A DNA stretch of 62,978 nucleotides, filler included, from Chiloscyllium plagiosum (lineage: Eukaryota), in assembly GCF_004010195.1 (NCBI RefSeq). It is 10 parts of 9 records of this genome, joined end to end, with 100 filler letters (N's around TTAATTAATTAA, not from the genome) between each part and the next. Parts side by side here need not be neighbours in the genome. Positions count along the whole stretch, not along the records: positions 1 to 31,207 come from NC_057717.1; 9 more parts are not named here. The stretch is one strand, 5' to 3'. Positions 10,471 through 31,307 of this stretch are shown piece after piece. The translations under genes were made by a program, and so were the position numbers. How positions within the stretch are numbered: the first letter of the stretch is position 1; each line of letters opens with the position of its first letter. The notes beneath the pieces are model-generated. The model was not told the DNA's origin. It worked only from the letters and a program-made list of their open reading frames with translations, and searched no databases.

Positions 10471-10690
10471 GGAGAAAGTGAGGACTGCAGGTGCTGGAGA
10501 TCAGAGTTGAGAGTGTAGTGCTGGAAAAGCACAGCAGGTCAGGCAGCATCTGAGGAGCAGGAAAATCAACATTCAGGCATAACCCCTTCATCATGTATCC
10601 TAATGAAGGCCTCATGCCCGAAACGTCGATTCTCCTGCTCCTCGGACGCTGCCTGACCTGCTGTACTTTTCCAGCACTACAGTCTCGACT
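10471..10690. mobile_element. Palindromic non-autonomous Penelope-derived element (paralogue about 27988-28210)
   Basis: Arms 10505-10594 and 10599-10690 are near reverse complements; each arm matches the PLE terminal repeat seen at 53960-54080. Confidence 0.8.
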
Positions 10691-13600
10691 GAGAAGCCAT
10701 TTGGTTGTAATAAAGCTTCTTAAGAAAGATCAACCATAATTAGCCGAGCAACATGGCAGGCCTTCAAAAAGGTAGCTGATGACCACCTTCTTGGGATATG
10801 TGACTAACCTTTTCATAAGTCAGTGAAGAATTCAAAAAATGCAAATTACGNNNNNNNNNNNNNNNNNNNNNNNNNNNNNNNNNNNNNNNNNNNNNNNNNN
10901 NNNNNNNNNNNNNNNNNNNNNNNNNNNNNNNNNNNNNNNNNNNNNNNNNNNNNNNNNNNNNNNNNNNNNNNNNNNNNNNNNNNNNNNNNNNNNNNNNNNN
11001 NNNNNNNNNNNNNNNNNNNNNNNNNNNNNNNNNNNNNNNNNNNNNNNNNNNNNNNNNNNNNNNNNNNNNNNNNNNNNNNNNNNNNNNNNNNNNNNNNNNN
11101 NNNNNNNNNNNNNNNNNNNNNNNNNNNNNNNNNNNNNNNNNNNNNNNNNNNNNNNNNNNNNNNNNNNNNNNNNNNNNNNNNNNNNNNNNNNNNNNNNNNN
11201 NNNNNNNNNNNNNNNNNNNNNNNNNNNNNNNNNNNNNNNNNNNNNNNNNNNNNNNNNNNNNNNNNNNNNNNNNNNNNNNNNNNNNNNNNNNNNNNNNNNN
11301 NNNNNNNNNNNNNNNNNNNNNNNNNNNNNNNNNNNNNNNNNNNNNNNNNNCACTTTCTCCTGATGGGTTTCTTAGTGAGGTCGGCACAGGAAAGGACCAT
11401 CACCTTATTGTTGAACGGGTAGGGCAGGCCAGGTAGGAAGGTCAGATGTCCTCCTCTGAAGGACAATACTGAACCATGTAACATACTTCAAAGCTTTGGT
11501 AGGTCTGTGAATATCGTTCATTATTCCAGCATTTTCATTTCATTCTCTTTTATTAATTGAAGCTACTATGGTAGGGACTGATTCTGGAACTTTACTCCAA
11601 ACCTTTTGATTGCTTATTACATACTCATAATGCCTCCTCAACCACTTTATCAAACTGTCATGTTAGCTTCAATGATTTTTTATTGACTCATGGAACATGG
11701 TGGTTGCTTTTAGTTGTCCGTAGTTGTCCTTCAGCAGATGGCAGTAGGCTGCCTTTGTGAAATAACATGTTCCAAAATGGCCTGAGGAAGGGAATTCCAG
11801 ACTTTGACCCAATTACAGTAAAGGATCGGTGGATATTTCCATGTCAGGATGCCATGTGTTTTAGAGAGGAGCTTACAGTGGTGCTGTTCCCATGTATCTG
11901 CTGCTCCTGTCCTTCGAGATGCAAGTGGTAGTGGGAAGGTACTGTCTAAGGAAGTGGCTAAGTTACTGCAGTGTAGTATTTTAGATAGTGCATATGACAG
12001 GTACTAAGAATCAGATTTGGAGGCAATGGACGCTTGTGGATGTGCTACTGATCAAGTGGGATGCTTTGTCCTGGACAATGCCAAGCTTCTTGAGTGCAGT
12101 TGAAGCTGCTCCTATCCAGTCAAGGGGCGAGCTGTGCTATTAGTCTCCTGACCTCTGTCTCTTAGACAGTCAATTGGCTTTGCGAGTCAGGAGGGTGAGT
12201 TACTCGCTGCAGTATTCCTAGCCTCTGGCCTGCTCAGACAACCATTGTATTTATATGGAGTGTCCAGCTCAATTTCTAATGAACAATAAAACCCAGGGTG
12301 TTGATGGTGAGGGATTCAGTGAAGGTAACACTATTGAATGTCAAGGGGTTTTGGTTAGGTTGTCTCTTATTGTCAATGGTCATTGTCTCGCAGCTTTGTG
12401 GTGTGAATGCTATGTGCCACTTGTCAGCTCAAGTCTGGAAATTGTCCAGATTTTGTTGTGTTTGAATGTGGACTGAGGAGTCACAAAAAAGTGCTAGATT
12501 AATGCAGATTTCACTTCTGACCTTCTGTTGGGGGGAAGGTCATTGCTGAAGTAGCTGAACACGATTGTGCCAAGGACACTTTCTTCAGGAACTCCAACAT
12601 AGATTTGCTTTGGCTGAGACGACTGCCCTCTAACAAGCAGAGCCATCTTTCAATGTGTGAGGTATGACTGCAGGCAGCAGGGAGGTTGTCACCTGATACC
12701 CATTGAATCCAGTTTTGCTAGGCTCCATAATATCACAGTCTGTCGAATGTGACGTTAATGTCAAGGGCTGTCACTCTCCCCTCATTTCTGGAAATCAGTT
12801 CTTTGTCCATGTTTAAATCAAGTCTGTAATTCAGACATGAGCTGAGTAGGCCTTGTGTAACCCACATTTACGCAGGTTATTGCTGAGCTAGTGCTGCTTG
12901 ATAGCACCTTCCTACATCTAACTCATGATTGAGCATGGACTGTTGGGGCAGTAATTCGCCAGGGTGGCTTGACCTATTTTCTGTGCACAGGACGTGCCTG
13001 GCCTATTTTCCACATTGTCCATGCCAGTGTTTTAGCTGTACCGGGATTGCTTGGCTAGCACAAGTCATCAGTATTATTGCCAGAATTTTGTCAGGCTCCA
13101 TCGCATTTGCAGTAACCCCTGCCCCCCTCTCCCCACCCCCCCCTCCCCCCAACGGTGTCTTGATTTCACATGGAGAGAGGCTAATTCCCTGCTGACTGGT
13201 ATCTGTGATGTTGGTGATCTATGAAAGATGCCGAGATGGATCACACAATTGGCACTTCAGGCTGAAGATTGCTGTGAATGCTTCAGCCTTAACTTTTGTG
13301 CTGATGTGTTGTGCTCTCCAAAGCAGAGCAAGGAAATATCTGTGGAGCTTATTCCTTCAATGAGTTGTTTAATTATCAACTTTAATTCATGACTTGATGT
13401 GGCAGCACTGTGGGCTCAGACCCCTGTTTCCTGAATGGATGTTCTAGGCACAATTTCTCCAGACTATAACTCCAACCCCCACTCCATAATGTGGATATTC
13501 ACAACAGAAGATTGTTTATCCTTTGTATTGTGTAGATTCCAACAATGCATCGTATATTCGCTTAAATTGTTAGTCTCGAAAATACTTTACTTCACAGACT

Positions 13601-15254
13601 TTAGGATATAATGTTCTAGTTTCAAATCTTCTCTCCGACAGGCAAGGCCATCGATGTCACGCTGGCCTTCCTCCTCACTAATTGCAAAACCAAACATTTT
13701 TCTCCACATCTTTGAACTTACTGATCAAAATTGCTACATTCTTGACTAGATCGTTCATATACGCTGCAAACAGCAAAGGATCCAGCACCAAGTCATATAG
13801 TAAGCCACTGAACACAAGATGTCTTCACAATGACTACCTTTGACCATTACCTTCTGCCAACAAATAAACCTTCGATGCATTTGCCAAACGGCACCAGATA
13901 CCACGAACCCTTACCATATTAAAGGTGCAAGATCTAGTCAAAAACCTGATTGAAGTCAAGAAGCATTACATCCACTTTTTGCACCCGATGTTACATCTCA
14001 TTGCCTCTCCGGAAAACAGAATCAACCACTTCCGATATGATATCACTTCCACCAAAGCCATGCTGCATTTTATTGCTTAAACCTTACAATTCCAACTTTT
14101 AATGAATGCTGTCTCTTAGATTTACTTATTAACTTCCCTCAAACTTTCTACTTTTAAACATAGGTTTATGAGTGAAACTACACATTGTCATTTAGCTCCT
14201 TTCACCCGATGATTACTTCTCTTATCTCTCTGACAGATAATTTACTCTAGCTGAAATAATCTTGTGACTCTTCTGTTTCATTCTGGGAAATGGGAATGGA
14301 ATTGAATACAATGTTGAGACCAACAACAACCTGTTTGTTCTTAACACTGTCAGTGTGTGTTCACCCTCAGAGGCAGGAAGACTTTGTGCTGATTAATACG
14401 GAAAGTAGCGCCTGATGTATCATTCTCAGCTGGCACACAACTTCCTGTTTCCATGTGCCAGCAGCAAGCCACACATCTCACTTCTGATCAGAAAATAAAC
14501 CCAGGGGATGCAATCTGGCGGAAACATCTGCCAATGTAGCCTATATCAGGACACAGAGTGTGAAGCGATCACATTGAAGTGACATTTGCAAATCGACCTT
14601 TCGATCGCTGTTTCACGGTCTGATTCCAGGACATCATTGGACGAGTCTCTCGACCATCTAACAAGCTCATTCGATTCACTAACGTCTGGGACATAACGAC
14701 ATGCACCTTGTCATGTCTTTGATCTTGTACTCTCTTTTCAGATTAATCTTCCCAGTTTTTGATTCTGTCTTCTGTATCCATCACCTTCCCAGCCGAATAC
14801 ATTCTGTTTGATCTATTTCCTAGATTTTGATCAACTAAACAAATAATACAGTTTTGTACAGACAGGTATGTTGGTGTGTCAGATTAACAGAATCAATATA
14901 TGGAGAGATCACCTCGGCTGTATCTAACTCTGACCGACATTGAATTCAAATAAAGCACAGCACTGTATGGTTTCAAACTTTGCAAATCCTCTCTCTTTGA
15001 AAGAGCTTGTTCTAACGGTTAATTATTTTCCTGATTATTTCAGAAACTATGACTAAAAATCCCTATTTTTAACAAAGTTTCAAATATTATTAAAAGTTGC
15101 AGCCCTGGCATTTCCTGCAGTGAGCTTTGTGGTGTTTAAATGTTCTGGTCAAAATTTGCTTCAAGCAGAAGACTTAAACATTGGTTTCTCCGAGTTCTCA
15201 GCCATTGCCCTTGCAGTTCCACAATAACTGCAAGCGATTGATAAGCCCCAGAAT

Positions 15255-16320
15255 TAACAGAATGTCCAGGCCCTGTACACATCCAAACGCCATGATGTCG
15301 GCCTCTAAGCCCTCCGTTTTTTCCTGTCACGCCAACCCAAGCAGTACATGCTCAACCTCAACTACATTTCCTTTCAATCCTCCCACTTCCTCCAAACCAA
15401 AGGAATAGCCATGGAAACCCAGCTATACCTGCCTCTTCGTCAGATATGTGGAACAGTCAATCTTCCACAGCTACACCGGTATCATTGCCCACCTTTACCA
15501 CCGCTACATTGATGACTGTATCAACGCCACCTCATGCTACCACTAGGAGGTTGAACAGTTAATCAACTTTACTAAAGCCTTCCACACTGTCCTAAACTTC
15601 ACAGGGACCATCTCGGACACCTCCCTCCCTTTCCTAGACCTCTCCACCTCTATCTCCAGTGACCGACTAAACATTTAATACAAGCCCACTGACTGCCACA
15701 GCTACCTGGGCTACACTCCTCCCACCCGACCTCCTGTAAAAATGCCATCCCTTATTGTCATTTCCTCTGCCTACACTGCACCTGCTCCCAGGAGGACCTG
15801 TTCCCAGATGACCTCCTTTTTCAAAGACTGCAATTTCCCCTCCCATGTGGTCGACGATGCCCTTGAACCCCATCCCTCCAATCGCAACAGGGAGCCCTCC
15901 TGGCCCTCATCTTCCACCGCACCAACCTCGCATACATCATATCATCCTCCGCTGCTTCCACCACCTGTAAACAGACCCCATCACTCGGGGTATATTTCCC
16001 TCCCTACCCCTATCTGCATTGGGGAGACACCATTCCCTCCACGACTCCCTCGTCAGGTCCATGCCCCTCCATCAGCCCACACCTCCCCCCTCACCTCCGA
16101 CAAGGCCCCAAACGATCCCACCACATCCCAGAGAAATTTGTCTATACTTCCACAAATGTCATCCACTGTGTCTGTTCCACCTGCTGTGGTCTTCTATACA
16201 TCAGGGAGACAGGACACGAACTTGCGGATCATTTCAGAGAACATCTCTGGGACACCCGTGCCAACCAACCCCACGGCCCCGTGGCTGACCACTTAACTCC
16301 CTCTCCCACTCCACCAAGAA
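15255..16320 (+). mobile_element. Penelope-like element remnant, copy B
   Basis: Paralogous to 5218-6345; RYIDD and LPFLDL motifs with stops and deletions. Confidence 0.9.
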
Positions 16321-16861
16321 AAGTCCGGTCATATTCTGTTCATTTCCAATGAATAAATACAAAATAACCGAGCCTGAATTTGGGATGCTATTAACAGGAT
16401 TTATTTTGATCTAAGCACGAACAGATTATTTTGACATAACAGGTGGAGAGATTCACTTCCTGAAAAAGCAGCTCAAGTGAGAGAAACTGGCACCAAACCG
16501 AGTTTGGTCAATACTGAGGCAAAAATACAGCATACAGTCTTGAGTGAAATAAATAAAGAAACTATCTTAACACCGGAACAAGATAGAGCGTATTAAATAT
16601 GAACAAAGGCACATGCATCTTAGGATATAATAGAAAAGTAATTTATAGTACATTGAAATGCAAACAGAGATGTGAATTTGTGTCTCGACATTCTTCCTAG
16701 CTAAATTAATCATTTCAGAAATGCCTTTGTTAAATTTCATGAATCATTCGTTGGTCCATTCCACGAACATTGCTAGGTCCTTGTTAAATTCTGAACCATC
16801 GCCTTCCAGGTTCACAGTGGTTGCGAGTTTCATGTTACAGCAAATTGTGAAGTTGTGCACT

Positions 16862-19381
16862 GTATGCCAATGTCTTAGTTAAAAATTTAAAGCAATCACA
16901 GCTCGAAACATTTACAAAATATCACGATGGATCTTCCTGGAATCCAAAAAATTGTCCCTTTGATCAATGATTTCTAAAATTTACTAACATATCTGTTGTG
17001 AAGGACGTTTTCAAATAACTTGAAGTGCAAATGGTTCACATCAGTCGGAATACAGTAACATTTCATGTGTTACCCCATACCAAAAGAAATCAAGCAATAT
17101 TCACGAGTTGCTCTCAGCAAGTCTATGATGGACTGTTTTATCAAACAAAATCATTTCCAATGTTGTGAGGGCTTGTCTATCTTCTGTGCAATGGTCTGAA
17201 TTTTGTGTCTGACTGCAGATGAAACTGGCTGATCTGGATAAAAGTACAGTTTGTGCCTTTCACGTTGTTAATGTATATTGCTGACTTTAGTTGAATAAAG
17301 TGATGTTGTCCCAGGCATCGTCTGGCACCATTAATTAGACCATTAATTTCCACATCACTAGCCAGACTATCAGGTGGGGTGTATTGATCTCATTGAAACG
17401 AATGCTTGGAATATTTCCGGTATGAATCATGTGAAGTGGAGCCTCTGAATGAGACATAGAACATAGAACAATACTGCACAGAACAGGCCCTTCGGCCGTC
17501 GATGTTGTGCCGAACATTTGTCCTAGCTTAAGCACCTATCCATGTACCTATCCAATTGCCACTTAAAGGTCACCAATGATTCTGACTCTGCCACTCCCAC
17601 AGGCAGCGCATTCCATGCCCCCACCACTCTCTGGGTAAAGAACCTACCCCTGACATCTCCCCTCTACCTTCCACCCTCCACCTTAAATTTATGTCCCCTT
17701 GTAACACTCTGTTGTACCGGGGAAAAAGTCTCTGTCTATCTATTCCCCTGATCATCTTATAAACCTCTATCAAGTCACCCCTGTTTCTTCGCCTTTCCAA
17801 TGAGAAAAGGCCTAGCACTCTCAACCTATCCTCGTACAACCTATTCTCCATTCCAGGCAACATCCTGGAGACAAAGTAGGAAAGATGAATTTCGAGTAGT
17901 AGGAGGTTTTTACGACAGAGCGAGATCACTTCACCCATCGCACCTGTATCACTTTATAGCATGTTGTCCATAACCGTGAGAGCACTGGAAACATTCAGGA
18001 ACATTGTGTAGGGTCTAATCCAATATCAACATAGATATGATCTCCAATGCTGTAAATCCTGGCTTATGGGAAAAAAGTAGGGGAAGAACTGTATCAATAT
18101 TCAAACAGTTGGTACAGCCCGGAGGAGCTAATAGGCCCATTTCTAAACCTTGTTCCTCAGGATATTTTGACTATTCTTGACTTAATATCATTGTAAACTG
18201 ACATGAAAAAAATGCAGACATGCTCCCCAGAAATGCTGACAGCAACATACCTTTATTCAGCCAAGATCAGCAACATGAATTAAGAAAGTTTAAAAAAATC
18301 TTTCTTTTAACTGATTATTGACAACACGAATTTCACAAAGCGCAAAGTACAGAGGGGAAGGGTGGAGGGGTGGGGGTGGGCGATGTTCGCTATTCCCTGA
18401 TGTCTGGTTGCGTTTGTGAGCAACAGATGAACCTGCGAACCATATTCAGGATGGTACTGCAGGTATTTCAGCAGATACTGTGTACACGGAATTCTCCCAT
18501 AAATCAGCAATGACATGAACATTTTTTTTTTTTTGGTGTTTGAAACCAACTAAAATTGAACAATATGGTGGGAGAAGTTCCTTTCATTTCTTTGAACTAG
18601 TAACAAGGGACGCTCTTTGTGGACCTGGGGTGGCAGGACGATCTTTCACAGCAGAATGTGAGGGAACAGAATCATGTTGGAAATCCAGATAGATTGGAAC
18701 TTGTTTCACTGGAGGGTGAGAGTTCGGGGAGGGGGGTGACCTCATATAAGTTTATAAAGCCATGAGTGGAAAGGTGAATGGCTCTAAATGACATGATTCA
18801 TACTGGAAATGTACGAAGCTTTCGTTTCAAAAATATCACATATCAATAAAGTCCACCTGACCCTACGGCTAGTGATGTGGAAATTAATGGTCTAATTAAT
18901 GGTGCCAGACGATGCCTGGGACAACATCACTTTATTCAACTACAGTCAGCAATATACATTAACAATGTGAAAGGCACAAACTGTACTTTTACCCACTTCA
19001 GCCAGTTTCATCTGCAGTCAGACACAACTTAAAATTCAGACCATTGCACAGAAGATAGACGAGCGCTCACAACATTGGAAATGATTTTGTTTGATAAAAG
19101 AATCCATTGTAGACTTCCTCAGAGCAATTCGTGTCAACAAACTTGTTTTTTTGTGTGTGTGGGGGGTAGCGCACGAAATGTTACTTTAATCCGATTGATG
19201 TGAACCATTTGCACTTAAGAAGTTGTTTGAAAACGTCTATCACAGTAGATACGCGAGTAAATTTTACAAATCATTGATCAAAGGGGACAATCTTTTTTGG
19301 ATTCGAGGAAGATCCACAGTGATATTTTGTAAATGTTTGGAGCTGGGATTGTTTTCAATTTTTGACCCAGACATTGGTGTA
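16862..19381. repeat. Long inverted repeat (arms about 16862-17443 and 18780-19381)
   Basis: The arms are reverse complements, e.g. CCCAGGCATCGTCTGGCACCATTAATTAGACC versus GGTCTAATTAATGGTGCCAGACGATGCCTGGG; also present in C (about 32933-33518 and 34912-35492). Confidence 0.9.
17454..17870 (-). mobile_element. CR1 LINE 3' fragment, copy B
   Basis: Paralogous to 3770-4182; RLRVLGLFSLERRR motif. Confidence 0.9.
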
Positions 19382-21545
19382 TTTCCCCTATGGTGGGGGA
19401 TTTCATCAATAGGGAACATGTTTTTCCAATGAGAGGAGAAAAAATTTAAAAAATATATCAAAGACAACCTTTTACACAGAGAATGGTTTGTGTGTGGGAT
19501 GATTGGGTGGTGGATACTTACAACCTTTAGAAGACATTTGGATCAGTAAATGAATATCAAATGTTTGGAAGGATATGGGCCAAGTACAGACAGGTGGGAT
19601 TCATTTAGTTTGGGATTAGGACTGGCATGGACTGGTTGGACCAAGGGGTCTGTTTCCATGCTGTATCACTACATGACTCTCTGACTATTTATCAATTTTT
19701 CTCAATATTAAACAGTGTTGTAGTGATCCTTGAATGAACTGTTGATGTTAAGGTTGTGTCTGAGACTCTGCGAATATTTCCTTCAATGAGAGGAGTGACT
19801 AGTTCTCCAAGTTACACAACTGAAAATAAACTTTTCTCCAACATTGTTGCTGAGTCGATTTGTTTCTTCGGAGGTGGTGGTTATAGTTTGCAGTTGACTT
19901 TCCACCAACTGGTCAACAGTGAGACAAAATATCTCTGATCCACTACAGAAACTCCACCTGCTTCCAGTAAATGAAACTGGGAACTCAAGGACCTTTTCTG
20001 CAGTCAGCTTAATTGCTGCCAACTATTGTATCCGGCCGATTAAACGGAAAATGAATCAACTAAAATAAAGTCCTACCAAACAAACTATATTTTCCCATTT
20101 ACTCACAATGGATACATTTCACTTGGCATTTCTCCCTTTAAAAGGAAAGTCACTGAATACAGCATTCACTGTATGACTATCAGAAAACAGGACATTGAAT
20201 GCAGTGACGTTCTGGTTAGTTCAGTTTTTTTTATTGAGTATCTTTAAAGCTCCTGAATATGAAGTTAATGGATCCAAAATCCCACATTGCAGTAACATTT
20301 GTTATCATCTCAAAGTAAATTAACAAAATTGAATTGGTTCAAACTCACATCACTTGTTACACCATTCTCTGATTCATGTATCTCATTAAAACTGAGTGGG
20401 CCCTTTATACATGGTTAACACTGGTGTAGTGTAACAGCGAATTTTTGCTGATTTTTATGAGTTAACTGCCCTGTCAGAGCTATCAGTGAGCAGAGAAATG
20501 TACTGTTTATAACCTACATTCGTGGTAATTATTACTGTAATACTCTCTAATTTAACCAAATATTCCTGATGTACCCAGACTGTTACATGCAATGGTTTAG
20601 ACGTTGAGGATTTAAAAAAAACTTCGGGACTGTCTTGTTCTAGTTCATTAGATGCTCTTTCAAAAGTTTACTTAGGTGTTATGTGTCACTGCGGACTCAC
20701 ATTTTGTTTCTCAGGCACACAGCTTTCCTTTACTGTGCATTTTAGTGTCGGAGCAATTTGGGAAAAAAAGATGCAGGGAGAGACATTCTGCAATGTAAGG
20801 AGGTGCTTCTAATCTCCGGGTCCAAACTGCTTAGTGACATACACTCACATTCTGAACATAATCACTTTAGACATGCTCCATATTAGGTTGCCGAAACTGA
20901 ATTTAGAAACGCAGATTAGAAATGGTATGTTATTTTGTAATGTGAGAGAGACTTTGAGTGACAGCAAAAATAAAGTCATTCATTTTGTTGGCTAATAATA
21001 TTATTGAAGTTCTTTTTAGCTTTATCTGCTTGTGGTGGAATGTGGGATTAAAGGGAGTTAACTTCTAATTGAATATTCTTAATATAATCACTTTGGACAT
21101 GCTCTGTATTCAGTTGCCTAAATTGAATTTTGAAATGTTTAGTATGAATTACATGTTATTTTGTAGTGCGACAGAGACTTGCAGTATCCAGGGAAGAAAA
21201 GCTCAACTGTTTTATTAGCTAGTAATATGTTTGAACTTTAATTTTAGTTTTATCTGCTTATGAATGAATGTAGAAATAAAGGGAGTTAACTTCCAGTTGA
21301 ATTTGTTTTTTTTTTAAACAAAATACATGCAACGACCATGTGAAACAGACCTAAAGCTACTCAAATTTACTTCAAAAGAAGCTATTCAGCAAAACAAATA
21401 TCCCAAGATGTGTATGTGTCCATGTTTAAGCAGAACCTCATGGAAAGACATGATCCCATGTGTTCGGGCTGTGCAAACTGATACCAGGATCCAGTCTGAG
21501 CCTCCAGCAGGAAACCAACATGTGGAAGCTGTAAGCCTGCCCCTT

Positions 21546-21562
21546 CCAATGGCCATATAAAT
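21546..21562 (+). promoter_or_regulatory. TATA box (21556-21562) of VH promoter, cluster B, with adjacent CCAAT sequence
   Basis: CCAATGGCCATATAAAT about 87 nt upstream of the ATG; CCAAT reads CCGAT in A and C, so it may be incidental. Confidence 0.65.
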
Positions 21563-21648
21563 CCGGGGCACTGGACCGAAATTCAACTCTCCTGGGTCGG
21601 CTCTGTTTAGAAAGATCTTGACAGAACGGCTTCCCACAAGTTAACAGA

Positions 21649-21697
21649 ATGATTGTGTCGACACTTTTTCTCAGTTTGTTGCTGACTTTCTTATCAT
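21649..21697 (+). CDS. IGHV: IgM VH leader exon, cluster B (open)
   Basis: MIVSTLFLSLLLTFLS + T|gtgagt; 127-nt intron to the AG at 21823-21824; the spliced signal peptide ends ...SCVQS. Confidence 0.93.
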
Positions 21698-21824
21698 GTG
21701 AGTGTTTGTTGTTCAAGTCTCTCTTTGTGACTGTCTCAATATTAGTCTACGGCAGGAATGTAAAAGACTCAGCCATCATTTCATCAGCATTAATGCTCAT
21801 GGTTTATTTGTTTTCTTTTTAAAG

Positions 21825-22128
21825 GTGTCCAGTCGGGGGTTGTTTTGACCCAGCCAGAGGCAGAGACTGGCCGTCCCGCAGGCAGCCTGAAACTGACCTG
21901 TAAATCCAGCGGGTTCGATCTTAGCAGCTACGCCATGCACAGGGTCCGACAGGTTCCCGGACAGGGTCTGGAGTGGCTGCTGTACTACTATAGTTCATCC
22001 AGCAGTAACTATGCACCAGCGATTAAGGGTCGATTTACTGCGTCCAAAGACACTTCAAACAAAATTTTCGCGTTGGACATGGAGAACCTGAAGATCGAAG
22101 ACACCGCCATCTTTTACTGTGCAGGAGA
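21825..22128 (+). pseudogene. IGHV: IgM VH exon, cluster B: open frame, conserved Trp changed to Arg, RSS lost
   Basis: [49 protein letters not shown]...[10 protein letters not shown] is a typical shark IgM VH. WVRQ is RVRQ, no heptamer follows, and the frame stops at 22154-22156. Confidence 0.92.
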
Positions 22129-22232
22129 GCCAAACCAAACTCAACACAGAATCTGAGTTTCATTTAATTCAGAAATTAGTCACATGAAGAGAAAGTTTTT
22201 AAAAAGTCACTAAGAAAGTTCAAAGTTCTTAC

Positions 22233-22282
22233 CTGAAGTCACTGTCACCGTGGTCCCTTGGCCCCAGTAGCCAAAGTTATAT
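22233..22282 (-). other. IGHJ: Joined D2-JH segment (inverted relative to V)
   Basis: Minus strand: ATATA (first 5 nt of D2) + ACTTTGGCTACTGGGGCCAAGGGACCACGGTGACAGTGACTTCAG|gtaag = YNFGYWGQGTTVTVTS, with WGxG motif and an intact donor. Confidence 0.93.
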
Positions 22283-22310
22283 CACTGTGAGACACGTTGT
22301 GTCAAATACT
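22283..22310 (-). other. 12-spacer RSS, 5' RSS of D2, cluster B
   Basis: Heptamer 22283-22289, 12-nt spacer, nonamer 22302-22310; identical to 39029-39056 in cluster C. Confidence 0.9.
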
Positions 22311-22613
22311 ATGACTGACCGTAAACTGTAAAATGCAGAGAATTTCTTCACTTTCTAGAAAGCAGTGATTCAGACTCCTCTAAAAATGATTTGGTGCATT
22401 ATTTCAGGTTTTACTATTCATCGTATTTTGAAAGCTTGGAATACTTTTCCAGGTTTGGTCTGCATTTAACTTGACAATCAACACGAAGAAGGTAGAAACA
22501 AATTATACATTTGTACAAACTAGCACTACCAGATTGCGTTTAAATTGCATCTCACATTATTTCTCGCTCCTGCCATGGTAGAAATCACCAATTTGAGATT
22601 AACACTTGTCAGT

Positions 22614-22693
22614 GGTTATTGTATGAGGATGTCGCTGTGCACAACACTGTGACGCACTGTAGTATCACAATGATGTAGACCAGTACACCTATT
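22614..22693 (-). other. D1 segment (22652-22665) with 12- and 22-spacer RSSs, cluster B (inverted)
   Basis: Minus strand: cattgtg-ATACTACAGTGCGT-cacagtg-22 nt-acaataacc; the 5' nonamer is degenerate (aataggtgt). Confidence 0.9.
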
Positions 22694-23053
22694 CTCTGTT
22701 CTTTACTCCAGATCTCAGTTTTCATTTAAAAGAGCCATTTAGTACTGATCATGTTTAGAATGAATGCCATAGTTGACATACCAATTAGCAGTGATTTCCT
22801 GAGCTGTCAGATATATTAAAACTAACATTTTGTCCGAGCATTTAATTGATGGAAGTGTTAGCAGTACATATGACATGCCCAAAACATTGCCCCATTGTGT
22901 CACCAGTTTGCTAGTTTAAATGGTACATTTCCTCTTTTATAGTTTTGTAAGAGGCAGCCTGAGGTCTGCTTCAGATCGCAGTTGGTATAATTGCATTTAA
23001 AACTCGTACTGACCGTCAGTTTATGATGGAATTGACAAAATGTTCCCTCGAGC

Positions 23054-23071
23054 TGTTTTTGAACGGGTCCA
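23054..23071 (-). other. Truncated V 23-RSS (nonamer plus 9 nt of spacer; heptamer missing)
   Basis: Minus strand TGGACCCGT-TCAAAAACA equals 38269-38286 of cluster C; the 21 nt CACAGCGAGAGGAACCAGGGC are absent. Confidence 0.9.
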
Positions 23072-23256
23072 ATTGGTGTTTTCTTTCTGGTGAGGAGATT
23101 GACTCTCTGGATTACTTTCACTACCAATATTTGTGAAGTTCTTTTGTTTCTCATGAATCATTTCTGCATTTGTTAAACTTATACGACATATTTTTCTCTG
23201 CTTGATTGAAAACATAACATCCATTTGTAACAGTCTGAAAAACAACTTAAGGCAGA

Positions 23257-23463
23257 AACCCGCAAGTGTGAGAAATGAAAAAAAACGAGTTTTCAATGCA
23301 TTGACTTTAAAAAAAAAACTCAGTTCTAATTATAAACTAATTGAATTTTGTTTTCAGTAACCCGCAAGTGTGAGAAATGAAAAAAACGAGTTTTCAATGC
23401 ATTGACTTAAAAAAAAAAACTCAGTTCTAATTATAAACTAATTGAATTTTGTTTTCAGTAACC
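23257..23463 (+). repeat. About 102-bp tandem duplication specific to copy B
   Basis: Two near-identical units starting AACCCGCAAGTGTGAG; single copy at about 40278-40384. Confidence 0.92.
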
Positions 23464-24724
23464 TCATTCAAAATAAAATTTGGGACCAAAATCTGAAACT
23501 GCAGAATTGATCAGATTATGCAATTGAAACTAACTTAAAATTATAATGTGGTAATATTTGTCCATTCAGTAATTTTGTTTTGACCATGAAGTAATTAATC
23601 AATATATACCTTCAACCGCTCCACTGTGTGCTGCACAAGATTGTCACGATCAAGAAGGGTGTACAGGTTGGAAATAAATTGAACTGTTGCCGGAAACTTT
23701 ACAGCTTTAAGTGTTAAGTCCCCTCATAAACAAGGTTGCTGTTATGACTTGTTATTTCTATTCAATTTAATCATTAGTTTGCTTGATTCTGAGCAGCTTT
23801 GTTAGACTTCAATTTGTTTTTTTTTGTGAGGTTACATCATGTTCTTGGTTCTGTTGAAAATGTTTGCAGAGCTAGTTCTGCTGCAAACACACCGTATTAT
23901 GATCTGGTGATCGTTGATCTGTTGAGGAGGGAATGTGCTTGGGTAACATTAAATGTATTATATTTGGGAAACCGTTTCCGGTTTCTACATTGTTGGTGAC
24001 GTGAACCGCTCCAGGTTCACCATTCAATGCAATCAGCATGCGAGTTGAAATTTAATAAAGCCTATTATTAAGTCAAAGGCAAATCGCAAAGGTTTTAGAA
24101 ATGAAGGGAAAACAGATACCTTCGGGCGCCATTTTTACTTAAAATAAATAATTAAGTATTTTTCTAATCCATGCTTTACAATCCAAATTCAGAACTCAAC
24201 TATCTAGTTCAATCACAAGGTCTGTCTTTAAACAGTTTACAAGTCATAGATAAATATAAATAGAATTTCAAAAGCCTAATGTTCTAATATTTCTTCCTCT
24301 TGAGCAAAAATGCCATGACTGTGTTATAATTGATCAGGAAACACCTTTCAATTCCGCTGTACACTACATATATATTTTTCTGGCTGGAAAAGATCATTGG
24401 CAAAGACCATTTGGAAATTCTGCTCAATTCTATGAAGAACAGATCAGTTTCACTGCTTTGATCGGTTTCACACGTAACTTGAGTTAATTAATTGTTATGT
24501 CCCTGATTAAACTGGATTTGCAGGATAAAAATAAAACATTAACTGAATTATTTAATCTGCACAGTGCTTTAGGTGTTCCCAATCTGTGTATTTTAAATAA
24601 ATAGTTACATTTGACTGCAAAATATCAACTGAAGAGTCATTCTTTAGGAAACAACTGCTATAGTGAATTATGTGTCCAAGGCCAAATTTCGAATTACTTA
24701 AAATAACCCACTCATGAACTCGCA

Positions 24725-25065
24725 GGGCAGCATGGTGTCTCAGTGGTTGGCACTGCTGCCTCACAGTGCCAGGGTCCCAAATTCGATTCCACCCTCGGGT
24801 GAATGCCTGTGTGGAGTTTGCACATTCTCCCTGTGTCTGCATGGGTTTCCTTCGGGCGCTCTGGTTTCCTACCACAGTCCAAAAGTTGTGCAGGTCAGGT
24901 GATTGTGAAATTTAGCACAGCCATAGTGTTCAGTGATGTGTAGGTTAGGGTGCATTAGTCGGGGTGAATATAAATTAGGGGGAATGGGTCTGGGTGGGCT
25001 ACTTACTGTTCAGAGGGTCAGTGTGGAATTGTTGGGCCAAATGGCCTGTTTCTATACTGTAGGAA
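24725..25065 (+). mobile_element. HE1-type tRNA-derived V-SINE (paralogue about 41965-42235)
   Basis: tRNA-like head GGCAGCATGGTG..CAGTGGTTGGCACTGCTGCCTCACAG, central GTGTGGAGTTTGCACATTCTCC and CR1-like tail. Confidence 0.85.
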
Positions 25066-25309
25066 CTCTATTCTTAAAACCATGGGAGTACTTGCTGCAA
25101 ACGCAGAGCATTCATTTTACATCGATGTGTTCAGACGTATGCAGAGTTCACAAGTTTGCAGAAGACATGAACTAAAGGATAACAGAGCACATTGTTTATT
25201 CAGACACTGGAAAAAAGAGTAATATGTATTTTAATTAATATACTTGACCGATTTATTGCAATGTAGCGATCGGAAGGAATCTGCTCACATTAGTTAAGTG
25301 TGACAATCA

Positions 25310-25597
25310 TTTAGATTAGATTTCCTGCAGTATGTATCGGGCCATTTGGCCCAACAAGTCCACACCGACCCTCTGAAGAGTAACCCAGCCAGACCCATTC
25401 CCCTACCCTATATTTACCCCTGACTAATGCACTTAACACTATGGACAATATAGCATGAGCAGTTCACCTGACATGCACATCTTTGGATTGTGGGAGGAAA
25501 CATTCACAGACACAGGACACATTGTATAAACTTCATATAGGCAGTCACCCGAGGCTGGAACCGAGTCTGGGTACCTGGACCTGTGAGGCAGCAGTGC
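25310..25597 (-). mobile_element. HE1-type SINE (paralogue about 42478-42762)
   Basis: Reverse complement of the SINE body with an (AATCT)n tail. Confidence 0.8.
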
Positions 25598-28500
25598 CCA
25601 CATTTACTGAGACAACCGCTAAAGTGGGCAACTCCAGACAGAAGCATGTTTTCAATTCATACCTTTTTAAACATTTTCGTTCATTAAAAGCAGTTAACAA
25701 GAAAATGACCTTGCCCTAATTCCTTCAACAGAAATGCTTTCCACACTGGAATGCAGTATTGACTTTATGCAGTGCATGCAAAATCTCCACAGTTCAAGGA
25801 ACGTTTTAAGAATATGTAAAAATAATTTAGAGAATAATCCATTTCCTCAGGATCTGTACTTTAATTGGCGATATTTCCCACCTCAATAATTTTGTTAAAT
25901 ACAATGACTTATTAAGTTTATGAACTCAGTGGTTATTTATGTTCTTGTGAACACATTCTCGTTCACATTAATCCACTAGTTAGTTCCTCTGATGAATGTT
26001 CAATTACAGTGAATATATTTGACGTGAGGAGTTGAGCAATGTATCCTCTAGGATTAAGTCTGTTGTACAGTTTGTTTCAGTGCTATCTCTGACTAACTTG
26101 TCAACGGTCCTGACCATTTGTAAATTGTCTAGTTCTGATACCTGAATCTCAAACAGTTCAATTTCATCTCGCGCTTCAAAACCACTTTTATCTGCCAGAA
26201 ATACAATATGCGATTAGGTGCCTCAGAATTGAGAGCCCTGACTAAGTTGTTCCAATCAGAATGAACGTTTCAGGAACAAATGGCAGTTAGCAAGAGTTTT
26301 GAAATTGGTTGTTGGCAACAAAAGATATTTGATTGAGCGAGGCAGAGGGAAATATGCTGTATATTTTCTTTGTGCCCCAATTATGCAGGACGTGTTTCGT
26401 GGCACAATGTAGAATCAGAATTTTTTTGCATCTTATTATTTGAAAACCTATTATCAGCTTTTAATGTCACTGGCAAAGGTCATATTACACTTCAAAACAT
26501 TTTAATATTTTTCAAACTAAGTAGACCGTCTGGTGCAGCAACATTCACAGGGGAAAGAGGAAGGGAGTTCTCGGGTGAAATCCAGTGACAGTGATTTGAT
26601 GGCAATGCAATTCCGAGTTTTATTCCTCTGTAGTTTCCATAGAGTTTGAACAATTTGGAGCTGCTGTCAAAGTATTATTGGTAAATGTTGAAATGTTACT
26701 TTCATTGTACAAACATTCTGGAACAATCCCTGTTCCAATAAGAGTACCAATAAGAGGTCAAACACCTGAAAAGCTTTGTCCAAATGGGGTGATGATCTCT
26801 ACAGTAAAAGCGCATCACTGGCCTCAACCATGCAAGAAGGGGAATTATTGTACCACACGGTCAGNNNNNNNNNNNNNNNNNNNNNNNNNNNNNNNNNNNN
26901 NNNNNNNNNNNNNNNNNNNNNNNNNNNNNNNNNNNNNNNNNNNNNNNNNNNNNNNNNNNNNNNNNNNNNNNNNNNNNNNNNNNNNNNNNNNNNNNNNNNN
27001 NNNNNNNNNNNNNNNNNNNNNNNNNNNNNNNNNNNNNNNNNNNNNNNNNNNNNNNNNNNNNNNNNNNNNNNNNNNNNNNNNNNNNNNNNNNNNNNNNNNN
27101 NNNNNNNNNNNNNNNNNNNNNNNNNNNNNNNNNNNNNNNNNNNNNNNNNNNNNNNNNNNNNNNNNNNNNNNNNNNNNNNNNNNNNNNNNNNNNNNNNNNN
27201 NNNNNNNNNNNNNNNNNNNNNNNNNNNNNNNNNNNNNNNNNNNNNNNNNNNNNNNNNNNNNNNNNNNNNNNNNNNNNNNNNNNNNNNNNNNNNNNNNNNN
27301 NNNNNNNNNNNNNNNNNNNNNNNNNNNNNNNNNNNNNNNNNNNNNNNNNNNNNNNNNNNNNNNNAATAAGTTGCTAAAGCCACTTCAGAATACAATCGAT
27401 TACTTCCCAATGGGTCTGGAATCTCATGTTGGCCAGACCATGGAAAGGTGACAGATGCCTTGTCTTTCGTGAACCAGCTGTTTTTGTATTTTTCCATTGA
27501 CTCGTGACATGGTCACCATTTGGCTTTCTTTCCGATTCCAGGCTTTCTTTGAATTCAAATTTCACCCTGGGCAAACAATGGTATTCCAAGCCCCGTCCAT
27601 TCAACATCAAACTGGAGTTTGGGAACACTGGTGTCATGATATCACCACTGTGATCCTAATATTGGAAATGCAGAGAAAGCGGTCACAACCAGAAATGCAA
27701 TAAATCTGACACTTTACATCATGAACAAATATTGGAGTGTAATACTGGTAAGAACTCTCCTGCTGTTCACAGCAACATCACAGGAGAATTTGCATCCAAT
27801 CATCAATCTTAAATTTGTACCGGACTCTGTCTGAAGAGCCTAACTCACTGTAATTTGCATTTTTTGAATTCTTCACTGACTTATGAAAAAGTTAGTCACA
27901 TATCCCAAGGAGTTGGTCATCAGCTACCTTTTTGAAGGCCTGCCATCTTGCTCGGCTAATTACGGTTGATCTTTCTTAAGATTTCTCAGTCGAGACTGTC
28001 GTGCTAGAAAAGTACAGCAGGTCAGGCAGCGTCCGAGGAGCAGGAGAATCGCAGTTTCGGGCATGAGGCCTTCATTAGGATACATGATGAAGGGGTGATG
28101 CCTGGAACGTTGATTTTCCTGCTCCTCGGATGCTGCCTGACCTGCTGTGCTTTTCCAGCACTACACTCTCAACTCTGATCTCCAGCACCTGCAGTCCTCA
28201 CTTTCTCCTGATGGGTTTCTTGGTCAGGTTCGGCACAGGAAAGGACCATCACCTTATTGTTGAACGGTAGGGCAGGCCAGGTCGGAAGGGCAGACGTCCT
28301 CCTCTGAAGGACAAGACTGAACCATGTAACATGCTTCAAACCTTTGGTAGGTTTGCCATTATCGTTCATTATTCCAGCATTTTCATTTCATACTCTTTTA
28401 TTAATTGAAGCTACCATGGTAGTGACTGATTCTGGAACTTTACTCCAAACCTTTTAATTGCTTATTTCATACTCATAATGCCTCCTCAACCACTTGATCA

Positions 28501-31307
28501 AACTGTCATGTTAGCTTCAACGATTTTTTTATAGACTCATGGAACATGGTGGTTGCTTTTAGTTGTCCGGAGTTGTCCTTCAGCAGATGGCAGTAAGCTG
28601 CCTTTCTGAAATAACACGTTCCAAAATGGCCTGAGGAAGGGAATTCCAGATTTTGACCCAATTACAGTAAAGGATCGTTGAATATTTCCATGTCAGGATG
28701 ACAAGTGTTTTAGAGAGGGGCTTACAGTGGTGCTGTTCCCATGTATCTGCTGCTCCTGTCCTTCGAGATGCAAGTGGTAGTGGGAAGGTACTGTCTCAGG
28801 AAGTGGCTAAGTTACTGCAGTGTAGTATTTTAGATAGTGCATATGGCAGGTACTAAGAATCAGATTTGGAGGCAATGGACGCTTGTGGATGTGCTACTGA
28901 TCAAGTGGGATGCTTTGTCCTGGACAATGCCAAGCTTCTTGAGTGCAGTTGAAGCTGCTCCTATCCAGTCAAGGGGCGAGGTGTGCTCTTAGCCTCCTGA
29001 CCTCTGTCTCTTAGACAGTCAATTGTCTTTGCGAGTCAGGAGGGTGAGTTACTCGCTGTCGTATTCCTAGCTTCTGGCCTGCTTGTACAATCATTGTATT
29101 TATGTGGAGTGTCCAGCTCAATTTCTATTGAACAGTAAAACCCAGGGTGTTGATGGTGAGGGATTCAGTGATGGTAACACTATTGAATGTCAAGGGGTTT
29201 TGGTTAGATTGTCTCTTATTGTCAATGGTCATTCTCTTGCAGTTTTGTGGTGAGAATGCTATGTGCCACTTGTCAGCTCAAGTCTGGATATTGTCCAGAT
29301 TTTGTTGCGTTTGAATGTGGACTGAGGATTCGCAAAACAAAGTGCTAGATTAATGCAGATTTCACTTCTGACCTTCTGATGGAGGGAAGGTCATTGCTGA
29401 AGCAGTTGAATATGATTGGGCCAAGAACACTTTCTTTCGGAACTCCAATGGAGATTTGCTTTGGCTGAGACGACTGACCTCCAACAAGCAAAGCCATCTT
29501 CGAATGTGTGAGTTATGACTGCAGGCAGCAGGGAGTTTGTCGCCTAATGCCCATTGAATCCAGTTTTGCCACGACTCCATAATATCACACTCTGTCGAAT
29601 GTGACCTTAATGTCAAGGGCTGTAACTCTCCCCTCATTCGCTTCTCTCCATGTGAAATCAAGACATTGTTGGGCGGGGGGGGGGGGGGGGGCGGGCAGGT
29701 GTTACTGAAAATGCTATGGAGCCTGACAAAATTCTGGCAATAATACCTGATGACTTGTGCTAGCCAAGCAATCCCGGTACAGCTAAAACACTGGCATCAA
29801 CAATGTGGAAAATAGGCCAGGCACGTCCTGTGCACAGAAAATAGGTCAAACCACCCTGGCGAATTACTGCCCCATCAGTCCATGCTCAATCATGAGTTAG
29901 ATGTATCAAGCAGTACTAGCTCAGCAATAACCTGCGTAAATGTGGGTTACGCAAGGCCTACTCAGCTCATGTCTGAATTACAGACTTGATTTAAACATGG
30001 ATAAAGAACTGAATTCCCTGCTGACAGGTATCTGTGATATTAGTGATCTATGGAAAATGCCGAGATGGATCAGACAATTGGCACTTCTGGCTGAAGATTG
30101 CTGTGAATGCTTCAGCCTTAACTTTTGTGCTGATGTTTTGTGCTCTCCAAAGCAGAGCAAGGGAAAATCTTTGGTGCTTATTCCTTCAATAAGTTGTTTA
30201 ATTATCAACTTTAATTCACGACTTGATGTGGCAGCACTGTGGTCTCAGACCCCTGTTTCCTGAATGAATGGTCTAGTCACAATATCTCCAGACTATAACT
30301 CCAACCCCCACTCCATGATGTGGATATTCACAACAGAAGATTGCTTATCCTTTGTATTGTGTAGATTCCAACAATGCATCGTATATTCGCTTAAATTGTA
30401 AATTAAAAAGTAAATACTTTACTTCACAGACTTTAGGATATAATGTTCTGTTTTCAATTCTTCTCTCTGACAGACAAGGTCATCGATGTCACACTGGCTT
30501 TCCTCCTCACTAATTGCAATACCAAACGTTTTTCACCTCATCTTTGAACTTACTGATCAAAGTTGCTACATTCTTGACTAGATCGTTCATATACTCTGCA
30601 AACAGCAAAGGATCCAGCACCAAGTCATATAGTAAGCCACTGGACACAAGATGTCTTCACAATGACTACCTTCGACCATTACCTTCTGCCAACAAATAAA
30701 CCTTCGATGCATTTGCCAAACTGCACCAGCTCCCATGAACCCTTACCATATTAAAGATGCAAGATCTGGTCAAAAACCAGATTGAAGTCAAGAAGCATTA
30801 CATCCACTTTTTGCACCCGATGTCACATCTCATTGCCTCTCCGGAAAACAGAAGCAACCACTTCCGATATGATATCACTTCCACCAAAGCCATGCTGAAT
30901 TTTATTCCTTAAACTTTACAATTCCAACTTTTAATGAATGCTGTCTCTTAGATTTACTTATTAACTTCCCCCAAGTTTTCTACTTTTAAACATAGGTTTA
31001 TGAGTGAAACTACACATTGTCACTTAGCTCCTTTCACCCGATGACAACTCTTCTTATCTCTCTGACAGATAATTTACTCGGGCTGAAATAATCTTGTGTC
31101 TCTTCTGTCTCATTCTGGGAAATGGGAATGGAATTGAATACAATGTTGAGACCAACAACAACCTGTTTGTTCTTAACACTGTCAGTGTGTGTTCACCCTC
31201 AGAGGCANNNNNNNNNNNNNNNNNNNNNNNNNNNNNNNNNNNNNNNNNNNNTTAATTAATTAANNNNNNNNNNNNNNNNNNNNNNNNNNNNNNNNNNNNN
31301 NNNNNNN

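What the first reader, a model, noticed from the sequence alone, without database searches (positions are those of the whole stretch)
22120..23080. Inverted D1-D2J block with one break at the V coding end: a fixed aberrant V(D)J event
Seen: relative to cluster C, 22130-23071 is inverted. At the left junction, V homology ends at TGTGCAGGAGA, within about 1 nt of the heptamer border, and joins the J-C intron about 100 nt past J in reverse. At the right junction, the V signal end lacks its heptamer and 14 spacer nt and joins the intron at the site matching about 40092, with 1 nt of microhomology. Established: RAG cuts at the coding/heptamer border, and cartilaginous fish carry germline-joined Ig genes attributed to RAG activity in germ cells. 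Inference: a RAG break at V was repaired onto non-RSS intronic breaks, giving inversion plus deletion, and became fixed. Both intronic ends bracket the switch-like array, so a combined RAG and switch-type (AID-like) origin is conceivable. I know of no description of this configuration but cannot check novelty.
Basis: partly seen in the sequence, partly recalled or inferred. Interest (0 to 1): 0.82.

Follow-up and report, generated by a model that had tools for sequence, protein, structure and literature searches.

The report
Inverted D-J block in shark antibody gene
In one shark antibody heavy-chain gene cluster the short stretch holding the D and J segments lies backwards, with one breakpoint exactly where the V(D)J recombinase normally cuts, so the cluster is dead, but it could not be shown that this is inherited rather than a one-off of the sequenced DNA.

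Summary
A VH gene (leader 21649-21697, V exon 21825-22128, + strand) runs straight into a 942-base block (22130-23071) that lies on the minus strand. The block holds the first 103 nt of the J-C intron, a fused D2J, D1 with both signals, the V-D1 spacer, and the V signal's nonamer with 9 spacer nt. From 23072 the distal J-C intron resumes on the + strand.

Contigs from three related organisms, and a Chiloscyllium punctatum protein that reads through the V signal, show the ordinary same-strand order. Against the contig of organism B the window lacks 22 letters at the V border (one coding nt, the heptamer, 14 spacer nt) and 513 intron letters. Homology breaks exactly at 22128/22130 and at 23071.

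A recombinase cut or nick at the V border, followed by illegitimate repair, is the best reading. 'Fixed' is not shown. The AID or switch-type idea has no support. V also carries a private loss of the invariant tryptophan (W to R), which fits a dead cluster. Interest is moderate.

The parts
21649..21697 (+). VH leader exon (MIVSTLFLSLLLTFLS plus 1 nt)
   Evidence: Translation. In one search a spliced joint 21697->21825 (GT..AG) appears in 2 contigs of run X15, from paralogues.
21825..22128 (+). VH exon (V-set). It carries a private W-to-R change at the invariant Trp (codon 21941-21943). Its coding end is intact to within 1 nt.
   Evidence: Pfam V-set, E 3.6e-12. 86 of 99 identical to P0001. At 21941 (A in the window, T in the runs) X1 and X5 show only the other letter and X15 nearly only it (37115.2 of 37274.4); X6 has no depth there (table 3).
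22129..22130 (.). Junction 1: V coding end joined to the reversed J-C intron. The G at 22129 is templated by neither side.
   Evidence: In one search, X5 record 17 ends at 22128 and record 18 starts at 22130. X1 and X6 have loose ends before 22130.
22130..22232 (-). First 103 nt of the J-C intron, inverted
   Evidence: X5 record 18.
22233..22282 (-). Fused D2J coding segment. The D2 part is at least 22275-22282, the J part at most 22269 downward, and 22270-22274 is of unclear origin.
   Evidence: Loose ends at 22269 and 22275 in X1, X5 and X6.
22283..22310 (-). 12-spacer signal upstream of D2J (CACAGTG, 12 nt, AGTATTTGA, read on the minus strand)
   Evidence: Signal scan. Coordinates.
22614..22693 (-). 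D1 (22652-22665) with its 5' 12-spacer signal (weak nonamer) and its 3' 22/23-spacer signal (CACAGTG ... ACAATAACC)
22694..23053 (-). V-D1 intersegment DNA, inverted
   Evidence: X5 record 17 lies on 22824-23071 and continues from V on one strand. P0001 read-through.
23054..23071 (-). Remnant of the V 23-spacer signal: the nonamer TCAAAAACA and 9 spacer nt. The heptamer and 14 spacer nt are missing.
   Evidence: 22 extra letters in X5 record 17, and the loose end behind 23071 in X1, X15 and X6.
23071..23072 (.). Junction 2: the trimmed V signal end joined to the distal J-C intron, with 1 nt of microhomology at 23071
   Evidence: In one search both the signal-side and the intron-side contigs include 23071.
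23072..26864 (+). Distal part of the J-C intron in the orientation of V. It includes a 101-bp tandem duplication at 23253-23463. No C-domain exon was found before the N run.
   Evidence: X5 record 18.. ORFs and Pfam scans give no Ig family.

Best explanation
This is a dead IgM-type heavy-chain minilocus of a shark close to Chiloscyllium.

Shown:
- The 942-bp segment between the V coding end and a point 103 nt into the J-C intron is inverted.
- 22 nt are lost at the V border: one coding nt, the heptamer and 14 spacer nt.
- About 513 nt are lost from the intron.
- D2 and J are fused.

Inferred:
- The V(D)J recombinase cut or nicked at the V coding/heptamer border.
- The V coding end was joined almost untouched to non-signal intron DNA.
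- The trimmed signal end was joined to a second intron site with 1 nt of microhomology.
- This happened either by end joining of two breaks or by a replicative template switch primed from the nick.

Inferred and not shown: the event happened in the germ line of this lineage and is inherited.

Consequences that follow from the anatomy:
- V has no heptamer and cannot recombine.
- D and J point away from V and from any C exons.
- The cluster is therefore a pseudogene, which fits the private loss of the invariant tryptophan in V.
For: -
- The ordinary order appears in related genomes, breaking exactly at the window's junction coordinates (X5 records 17 and 18; loose ends in X1, X15 and X6). It also appears in P0001.
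- The flanks share no long inverted homology that could mislead an assembler or drive homologous inversion.
- There are no N letters at the junctions.
- Junction 1 has at most 1 added nt and junction 2 has none. This resembles the germline joints of Lee et al. 2000, which show little sign of TdT (PMC2193156, passages).
- Window-private letters are spread over the promoter, V, the inverted block and the intron alike (table 3; 40 rows shown, 42 not shown). This looks like evolutionary divergence of one cluster and not like local hypermutation.
- The 4 V-exon rows shared by at least three runs (21837, 21905, 21941, 22063) all change the protein, including Trp to Arg.
- Germline recombinase activity that makes joined Ig genes, DJ fusions included, is established in cartilaginous fish (PMC2193156 and PMC5192425, passages).
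Against: - No read or contig from any run was shown to cross either inverted junction. Only 32 pieces were listed and 1058 were not, so this is not proof of absence.
- The best run holds 0.37 of the sampled words. At many places none of the laid runs that cover the place shows the window's letter. The window's own individual or species was therefore never examined.
- The block sits in a 15.5-kb stretch between two 500-N runs, a size that a few long reads could give.
- D2-J fusion plus a second recombinase-type event on one molecule is what a lymphocyte would produce. Partial rearrangements such as V-D-DJ are common in shark thymocytes (PMC2435157, passages).
- Recombinase signal ends are normally joined without loss (recalled). 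Here 21 nt are gone.
- No partner signal was found.
Confidence: 0.45

Rival explanations
1. It is a somatic product. A lymphocyte (thymocyte or B-lineage cell) in the tissue used for sequencing joined D2 to J and then made an aberrant inversion at V. One or a few long reads of that molecule survived as a small contig.
For: - The stretch between the two 500-N runs is 15.5 kb.
- There are two recombinase-type events on one molecule.
- Partial rearrangements are frequent in shark lymphocytes (PMC2435157, passages).
- The inverted form was not seen in any laid run.
Against: - Assemblers usually drop single-molecule variants (recalled).
- The V already carries a private loss of the invariant Trp, and private letters run from upstream of the promoter to far into the intron. 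This fits an old pseudogene better than a cluster that was functional until a somatic accident.
- There is little or no N addition at the two inversion junctions.
Confidence: 0.2
2. It arose by canonical inversional V(D)J recombination between the V 23-signal and a cryptic 12-signal of the same orientation inside the intron. The heptamer-to-heptamer signal joint was later eroded. This is a germline event that differs from the best explanation only in mechanism.
For: - The inversion topology is what two signals of the same orientation give (established knowledge).
- The first 30 deleted letters hold a nonamer-like run (loose end before 22130).
- The rest of the 513 letters is unseen.
Against: - The nonamer-like run has the J-type orientation, which gives deletion and not inversion.
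- No CAC-headed heptamer lies in the 30 known letters next to the J-proximal break.
- Neither retained intron end starts or ends as a signal end.
- No signal joint is left.
- The model needs a second deletion event.
Confidence: 0.1
3. It is an assembly or library artefact, such as a chimeric read or a wrong graph path. The real locus has the ordinary order.
For: - The region is multi-copy, with paralogues about 93-94% alike within the piece, and is broken by N runs.
- No outside support for the junctions was found.
Against: - A random chimera would not break within 1 nt of the V coding/heptamer border.
- The block occurs once, so it is not a fold-back duplication.
- No shared words or inverted repeats lie at the junction flanks.
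- No N letters lie at the junctions.
- The same block also carries a clean D2-J fusion.
Confidence: 0.1
4. It is an ordinary evolutionary inversion with deletions, for example from replication error, that owes nothing to the recombinase. The breakpoint at the V border is coincidence.
For: - Junctions with 0-1 nt of microhomology and flanking deletions are typical of replication-based rearrangements (recalled).
- Three of the four break positions are not at signals.
Against: - The chance of hitting the V border within 1 nt is roughly 0.6% by my own arithmetic, or roughly 4% for any of the six coding/heptamer borders.
- The same cluster shows a second recombinase-type event, the D2-J fusion.
Confidence: 0.1
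5. The origin combines the recombinase with a switch-type (AID) break. The intron breaks arose in a switch-like repeat array.
For: Sharks switch between clusters, as the reviews read here state (passages). That the joints lie in the J-C intron is recalled from Zhu et al. 2012, which is not held here.
Against: - The deleted stretch is unseen apart from 60 letters, which show no array.
- The retained flanks have no tandem array within 180 nt.
- AID acts in activated B cells, which would make the event somatic and contradict 'fixed'.
Confidence: 0.03

Closest known systems
Germline-joined and partly joined Ig genes of cartilaginous fish (VD-J, VD-DJ, VDJ, VJ)
   Same: The segments are fused by a recombinase-type deletion, with trimming and little N addition. 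The D2-J fusion here is of that kind, and its 5' signal is kept. Sources: PMC2193156 and PMC5192425, passages.
   Different: Known cases are simple deletional joins in one orientation. Here V is not joined to a segment. It is joined to intron DNA, and the D-J block is inverted. Germline status is not shown here.
Inversional V(D)J recombination (teleost IgL clusters, per PMC5192425 passages; mouse kappa, recalled)
   Same: The DNA between two breaks is inverted, and the V coding end is kept almost intact.
   Different: There is no partner signal, no retained precise signal joint, and deletions of 21 and about 513 nt. The product is non-functional. Shark clusters normally have all segments in one orientation (PMC5192425, passages).
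Illegitimate recombinase events in lymphoid cells (a coding or signal end joined to a non-signal break; cryptic-signal deletions). Recalled, not read here.
   Same: One authentic signal break is repaired onto DNA that is not a signal.
   Different: Those events are somatic and are mostly described in mammalian leukaemia and lymphoma. Here the candidate is a heritable event inside an Ig minilocus.
Replication-based template-switch rearrangements (FoSTeS/MMBIR). Recalled.
   Same: An inverted segment flanked by two deletions, with 0-1 nt of microhomology at the junctions.
   Different: The proposed priming end is a recombinase nick at a signal border. This is my inference and nothing here tests it.

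Membership tests
Cartilaginous-fish IgM-type heavy-chain minilocus (V-D1-D2-J-C) | VH exon with a split leader | tested here: met
   Pfam V-set. 87% identical to a C. punctatum VH. Leader translation. A spliced leader joint appears in X15 contigs.
Cartilaginous-fish IgM-type heavy-chain minilocus (V-D1-D2-J-C) | D and J segments flanked by 12- and 23-spacer signals | tested here: met
   a D2J 12-signal, a D1 3' 22/23-signal, a D1 5' signal with a weak nonamer, and a remnant of the V 23-signal.
Cartilaginous-fish IgM-type heavy-chain minilocus (V-D1-D2-J-C) | C exons downstream of J in the same orientation | tested here: inconclusive
   None of the ORFs of 70 aa or more in 23072-26864 or 27365-31207 has an Ig family. 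An N run at 26865-27364 may hide or replace the C exons.
Germline-joined Ig gene | Segments fused, with loss of the intervening DNA and of the two signals used | tested here: met
   This holds for D2-J. Contigs of related organisms part from the window at 22269 (going on into a J signal) and at 22275 (going on into a D2 3' signal).
Germline-joined Ig gene | Present in non-lymphoid DNA and inherited | not testable with these tools
   No run of the source genome was found (best share 0.37).
Canonical inversional V(D)J recombination | A 12/23 pair of signals in the same orientation at the two breaks | tested here: inconclusive
   The retained flanks hold no signal-like site (only the D2J and D1 signals in 21800-24000). 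Only 60 of the 513 deleted letters are known.
Canonical inversional V(D)J recombination | A precise heptamer-to-heptamer signal joint kept on the chromosome | tested here: not met
   The V heptamer and 14 spacer nt are absent. Junction 2 is spacer to intron.
Recombinase-mediated transposition of a signal-ended fragment | Both ends of the moved piece are signal ends, with a 3-5 bp target duplication | tested here: not met
   One end of the block is plain intron. No duplication lies at 22125-22130 or 23071-23076. The target-duplication criterion is cited from PMC2193156, passages.
Switch-type (AID-dependent) recombination | Breaks inside a repetitive, hotspot-rich region upstream of C | not testable with these tools
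   The deleted stretch is not in the piece. The nearest tandem repeat in the retained intron starts 180 nt from the junction.

The most novel reading that the evidence does not exclude
The inversion is heritable. On this reading the recombinase acted in germ cells of this shark lineage. It fused D2 to J, and it also made an illegitimate product, with a V coding end joined to non-signal intron DNA and the D-J block flipped. Germline recombinase activity would then produce structural damage and pseudogene clusters as well as joined genes. This would be a new source of birth and death among Ig miniloci. It would also be a natural example of a two-ligation (inversional) germline event, which Lee et al. 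2000 considered unlikely to succeed.
Probability: 0.45. Interest if true: 0.6.

Novelty: new variant of a known kind. Interest (0 to 1): 0.45.

Why it matters
Germline-joined Ig genes are the only footprint so far of recombinase activity in shark germ cells, and they are all tidy deletional joins.

An inherited inversion with one break at a signal border and the other at ordinary DNA would show that the germline enzyme also makes mistakes. Such mistakes restructure and kill miniloci. That bears on how the multi-cluster Ig loci turn over, and on the cost of carrying a domesticated transposase.

If the structure is instead somatic or an artefact, the lesson is practical. Small contigs at antigen-receptor loci in assemblies may carry lymphocyte rearrangements and should not be annotated as germline.

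Tried and rejected
1. An intact cluster for base-by-base comparison was not in the piece. Two exact-pattern scans of metagenome contigs found nothing. The comparison therefore rests on the Logan contigs and on P0001.

2. I looked for the junction in predicted proteins. The V ORF with its junction tail found 14 proteins, and none carried the tail. This is a weak negative, because such ORFs are rarely annotated.

3. Homology-driven inversion or an assembler confused by inverted repeats is rejected. The best inverted pair touching the junction flanks is 30 nt at 70-73%.

4. A cryptic signal in the retained flanks was not found (2 sites seen, both real D/J signals; shuffles give a mean of 0.5).

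5. Transposition of a signal-ended fragment is rejected. One end is not a signal and there is no target duplication.

6. I considered using N addition at the D2-J joint to tell lymphocyte from germ cell. This was dropped. The 5 letters at 22270-22274 may be J-derived, because J 5' ends differ between clusters.

7. Literature. Searches turned up no description of an inverted D-J block in a cartilaginous-fish Ig cluster. That is 5 full-text searches of an incomplete library, not proof that none is in print. Zhu et al. 2012 and Zhang et al. 2013 were not held, so what I say of shark switching is from the reviews (passages) and from recall. For all papers I saw only search listings and 'find' passages. 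Supplements were not consulted.

Full report
**What the piece is.**
- The piece runs from 1 to 31207 and has two 500-N runs, at 10851-11350 and 26865-27364.
- A self-comparison shows three copies of the same roughly 10-kb upstream region. Positions 1-10849 are an inverted copy (about 93-94% identical) of 11351-21747. Positions 27850-31207 are a third copy in the orientation of the second.
- The second copy ends in a VH gene on the + strand.
  - The leader exon is 21649-21697 (MIVSTLFLSLLLTFLS).
  - The leader intron is 21698-21824. Two contigs of run X15 show it spliced out in paralogues (GT..AG).
  - The V exon starts at 21825.
- The V exon is a V-set domain (Pfam E 3.6e-12). Its best named relative is a Chiloscyllium punctatum protein, P0001 (87% identity).
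- The genome is therefore a shark near the bamboo sharks. The species is not known to me.

**The observation.**
- V coding ends ...TGTGCAGGAGA at 22128.
- The next 942 bases (22130-23071) read sensibly only on the minus strand. In minus-strand order they hold:
  - 9 nt of signal spacer and the nonamer TCAAAAACA (23071-23054);
  - about 360 nt of V-D1 spacer;
  - D1 (22665-22652) between CATTGTG and CACAGTG;
  - the D1-D2 spacer;
  - a 12-spacer signal (22310-22283);
  - a 50-nt coding segment (22282-22233) that translates as YNFGYWGQGTTVTVTS;
  - a GT splice donor and 103 nt of intron, down to 22130.
- From 23072 the sequence is again on the + strand.
- A consensus scan of 21800-24000 found exactly two signal sites, the D2J 12-signal and the D1 3' signal. 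Shuffled sequence gave 0.5 on average.

**Outside evidence that this is an inversion of an ordinary cluster.**
- No run held more than 0.37 of the sampled words of 21600-23600.
- I laid Logan contigs of four runs from three organisms and four studies on 21500-24000. The numbers of pieces laid were 695 for X15, 279 for X1, 11 for X5 and 89 for X6.
- Run X5 (organism B) has contigs long enough to show the order.
  - Record 17 carries V up to 22128, then 22 letters absent from the window, then 23071..22824, all on one strand.
  - Record 18 carries 22269..22130, then 513 letters absent from the window, then 23071-23308 and 23411-23534, all on one strand.
- That is the ordinary order: V, signal, V-D1 spacer, and so on to J and the intron.
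- The eight listed X5 pieces differ from the window at 78 of 2242 letters (about 96.5% identity). That is closer than the window's own paralogous copies (about 93.5%).
- In X1, X15 (organism A) and X6 (organism C), contigs leave the window exactly at 23071, from both sides. In X1 and X6 they also leave it at 22130.
- The letters that follow 23071 on the signal side are those of a heptamer, 14 spacer nt and a V end.
- Independently, P0001 reads from V straight through the signal into the V-D1 spacer. Its residues 18-116 match the window's V. Its residues 119-141 match the minus-strand translation of 23098-23024 (15 of 23).
  - The window lacks one coding nt, the heptamer and 14 spacer nt at V.
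  - It lacks about 513 nt of intron.
  - 23071 is a shared letter.
  - The G at 22129 belongs to neither side.

**The D2J fusion.**
- J-type contigs match the window only up to 22269 and then go on into a J 5' end and its signal.
- D2-type contigs match only from 22275 and go on, the other way, into the rest of D2 and its 3' signal. Both are seen as loose ends in X1, X5 and X6.
- The window's segment therefore has D2's 5' signal and first 8 nt, and J's body.
- The five letters between them cannot be assigned.

**What was not found.**
- No listed contig of any run crosses either inverted junction. Only 32 pieces were listed and 1058 were not, and contigs drop rare variants, so this is not absence.
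- At many places none of the laid runs that cover the place shows the window's letter. At 21941 and 22063 that is X15 (at 21941 nearly all of its depth), X1 and X5. At 22189, 22530/22531 and 23698 it is all four runs. This comes, table 3, which shows 40 rows and leaves 42 unshown.
- None of the runs is therefore the source of this cluster.
- 'Fixed' is thus untested, and so is 'germline'.

**Why I still think the structure is real DNA and recombinase-initiated.**
- The junctions are inside a contig, with no N letters beside them.
- The block occurs once, so it is not a fold-back.
- The flanks share no inverted homology beyond 30 nt at 70-73%.
- One breakpoint falls within 1 nt of the V coding/heptamer border. 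By my own rough arithmetic this has a chance of about 0.6% for four breakpoints in about 2 kb.
- The same block carries a second recombinase-type product, the D2-J fusion.

**Mechanism.**
- Shown: an inversion, two deletions, an almost intact V coding end, at most 1 added nt at junction 1, and 1 nt of microhomology at junction 2.
- Inferred: a recombinase cut or nick at the V border.
- Two repair routes fit.
  - (a) A full break at V and a second break in the intron, with resection of 21 nt from the signal end and about 513 nt in the intron, followed by end joining in the wrong orientation.
  - (b) A nick only, which needs no partner signal (recalled). The 3' end of the V coding strand would prime copying of the other strand from the intron back towards V. 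Copying would run off 21 nt short of the nick and switch to the distal intron at a 1-nt match.
- Route (b) explains the intact coding end and the nearness of junction 2 to the nick without a second break. Nothing here tests it.
- Canonical inversional recombination with a cryptic signal is not excluded, because 453 of the 513 deleted letters are unseen. It needs a later loss of the signal joint. The 30 letters next to the J-proximal break show no CAC-headed heptamer in the required orientation.

**Germline or somatic.**
- For germline:
  - V has a private change of the invariant tryptophan to arginine (21941). The four V-exon differences shared by at least three runs all change the protein.
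  - Private letters are spread evenly from upstream of the promoter to the distal intron, as in an old, diverging pseudogene.
  - The inversion junctions show almost no added letters. This is like the germline joints of Lee et al. 2000, which show little sign of TdT (PMC2193156, passages).
- For somatic:
  - The stretch between the N runs is only 15.5 kb.
  - Two recombinase events lie on one molecule.
  - Partial rearrangements, V-D-DJ among them, are common in shark lymphocytes, especially thymocytes (PMC2435157, passages).
- I put germline at about 0.55 in all (0.45 for the best explanation plus 0.10 for the cryptic-signal variant), somatic at 0.2, artefact at 0.1 and a non-recombinase inversion at 0.1.

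**Consequences.** Without its heptamer V cannot be cut again. D1 and D2J keep good signals but face away from V. No C-domain exon was found in 23072-26864 or after the second N run. The cluster is non-functional.

**Comparison with what is known.**
- Reviews state that shark clusters keep V, D and J in one orientation, and that germline forms VD-J, VD-DJ and VDJ occur (PMC5192425, passages).
- Lee et al. 2000 argue for recombinase activity in germ cells. They remark that an inversional germline event would need ligation at two sites and so be rarer (PMC2193156, passages).
- Five full-text searches gave no description of an inverted D-J block in such a cluster. The library is incomplete, and two key shark switching papers were not held.
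- I file the finding as a new variant of a known kind, conditional on germline status.

**The AID or switch idea.** Nothing supports it. The deleted stretch is unseen, and the retained intron has only a 101-bp tandem duplication starting 180 nt from the junction. AID action would also imply a B cell, that is, a somatic event.

Noticed in passing
window 1-10849 vs 11351-21747, and 27850-31207: Three copies (about 93-94% alike) of a roughly 10-kb region upstream of V. The first two are inverted relative to each other around the N run at 10851-11350, so two V genes would stand head to head about 21 kb apart. The left V runs off the piece at position 1, which lies inside its leader intron. If the N runs are scaffold gaps, the relative orientation may be arbitrary.
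   Followed up: partly
window 21941 (codon 21941-21943): The invariant framework-2 tryptophan of V is arginine here (AGG). X1 and X5 show only T at 21941 and X15 nearly only T; X6 has no depth there. Three other private V changes also alter the protein (21837, 21905, 22063).
   Followed up: partly
window 23253-23463: A 101-bp unit is present 2.1 times (97% alike). The contig of organism B skips 102 letters (23308->23411), so it has one copy fewer. This is a recent tandem duplication in the distal J-C intron.
   Followed up: partly
run X15 laid on window 21500-24000: X15 is listed with kind '?', but it behaves like RNA or cDNA. It shows a spliced leader joint (21697->21825), very high depth on V, and a D1-to-J joint (22267->22655) with 7 extra letters. 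That joint is an ordinary somatic D-J junction of a paralogous cluster.
   Followed up: no
window 3600-8100 and 13700-18000: These stretches have strong GC skew and several long ORFs on both strands, one holding a YIDD-like motif (5770-6258, minus strand). They look like decayed retroelement copies. The reverse-transcriptase reading is recalled. Pfam gave no family for the 7 tested.
   Followed up: partly
window 24736-25077 vs 25614-25310: An inverted pair of about 340 nt (72% alike) inside the distal intron, probably two old copies of a short interspersed repeat.
   Followed up: no
window 26865-27364 and downstream: After 3.8 kb of intron comes an N run and then, at once, the far-upstream region of the next cluster. 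No C exons are seen for this cluster. They are either hidden by the N run or missing.
   Followed up: partly
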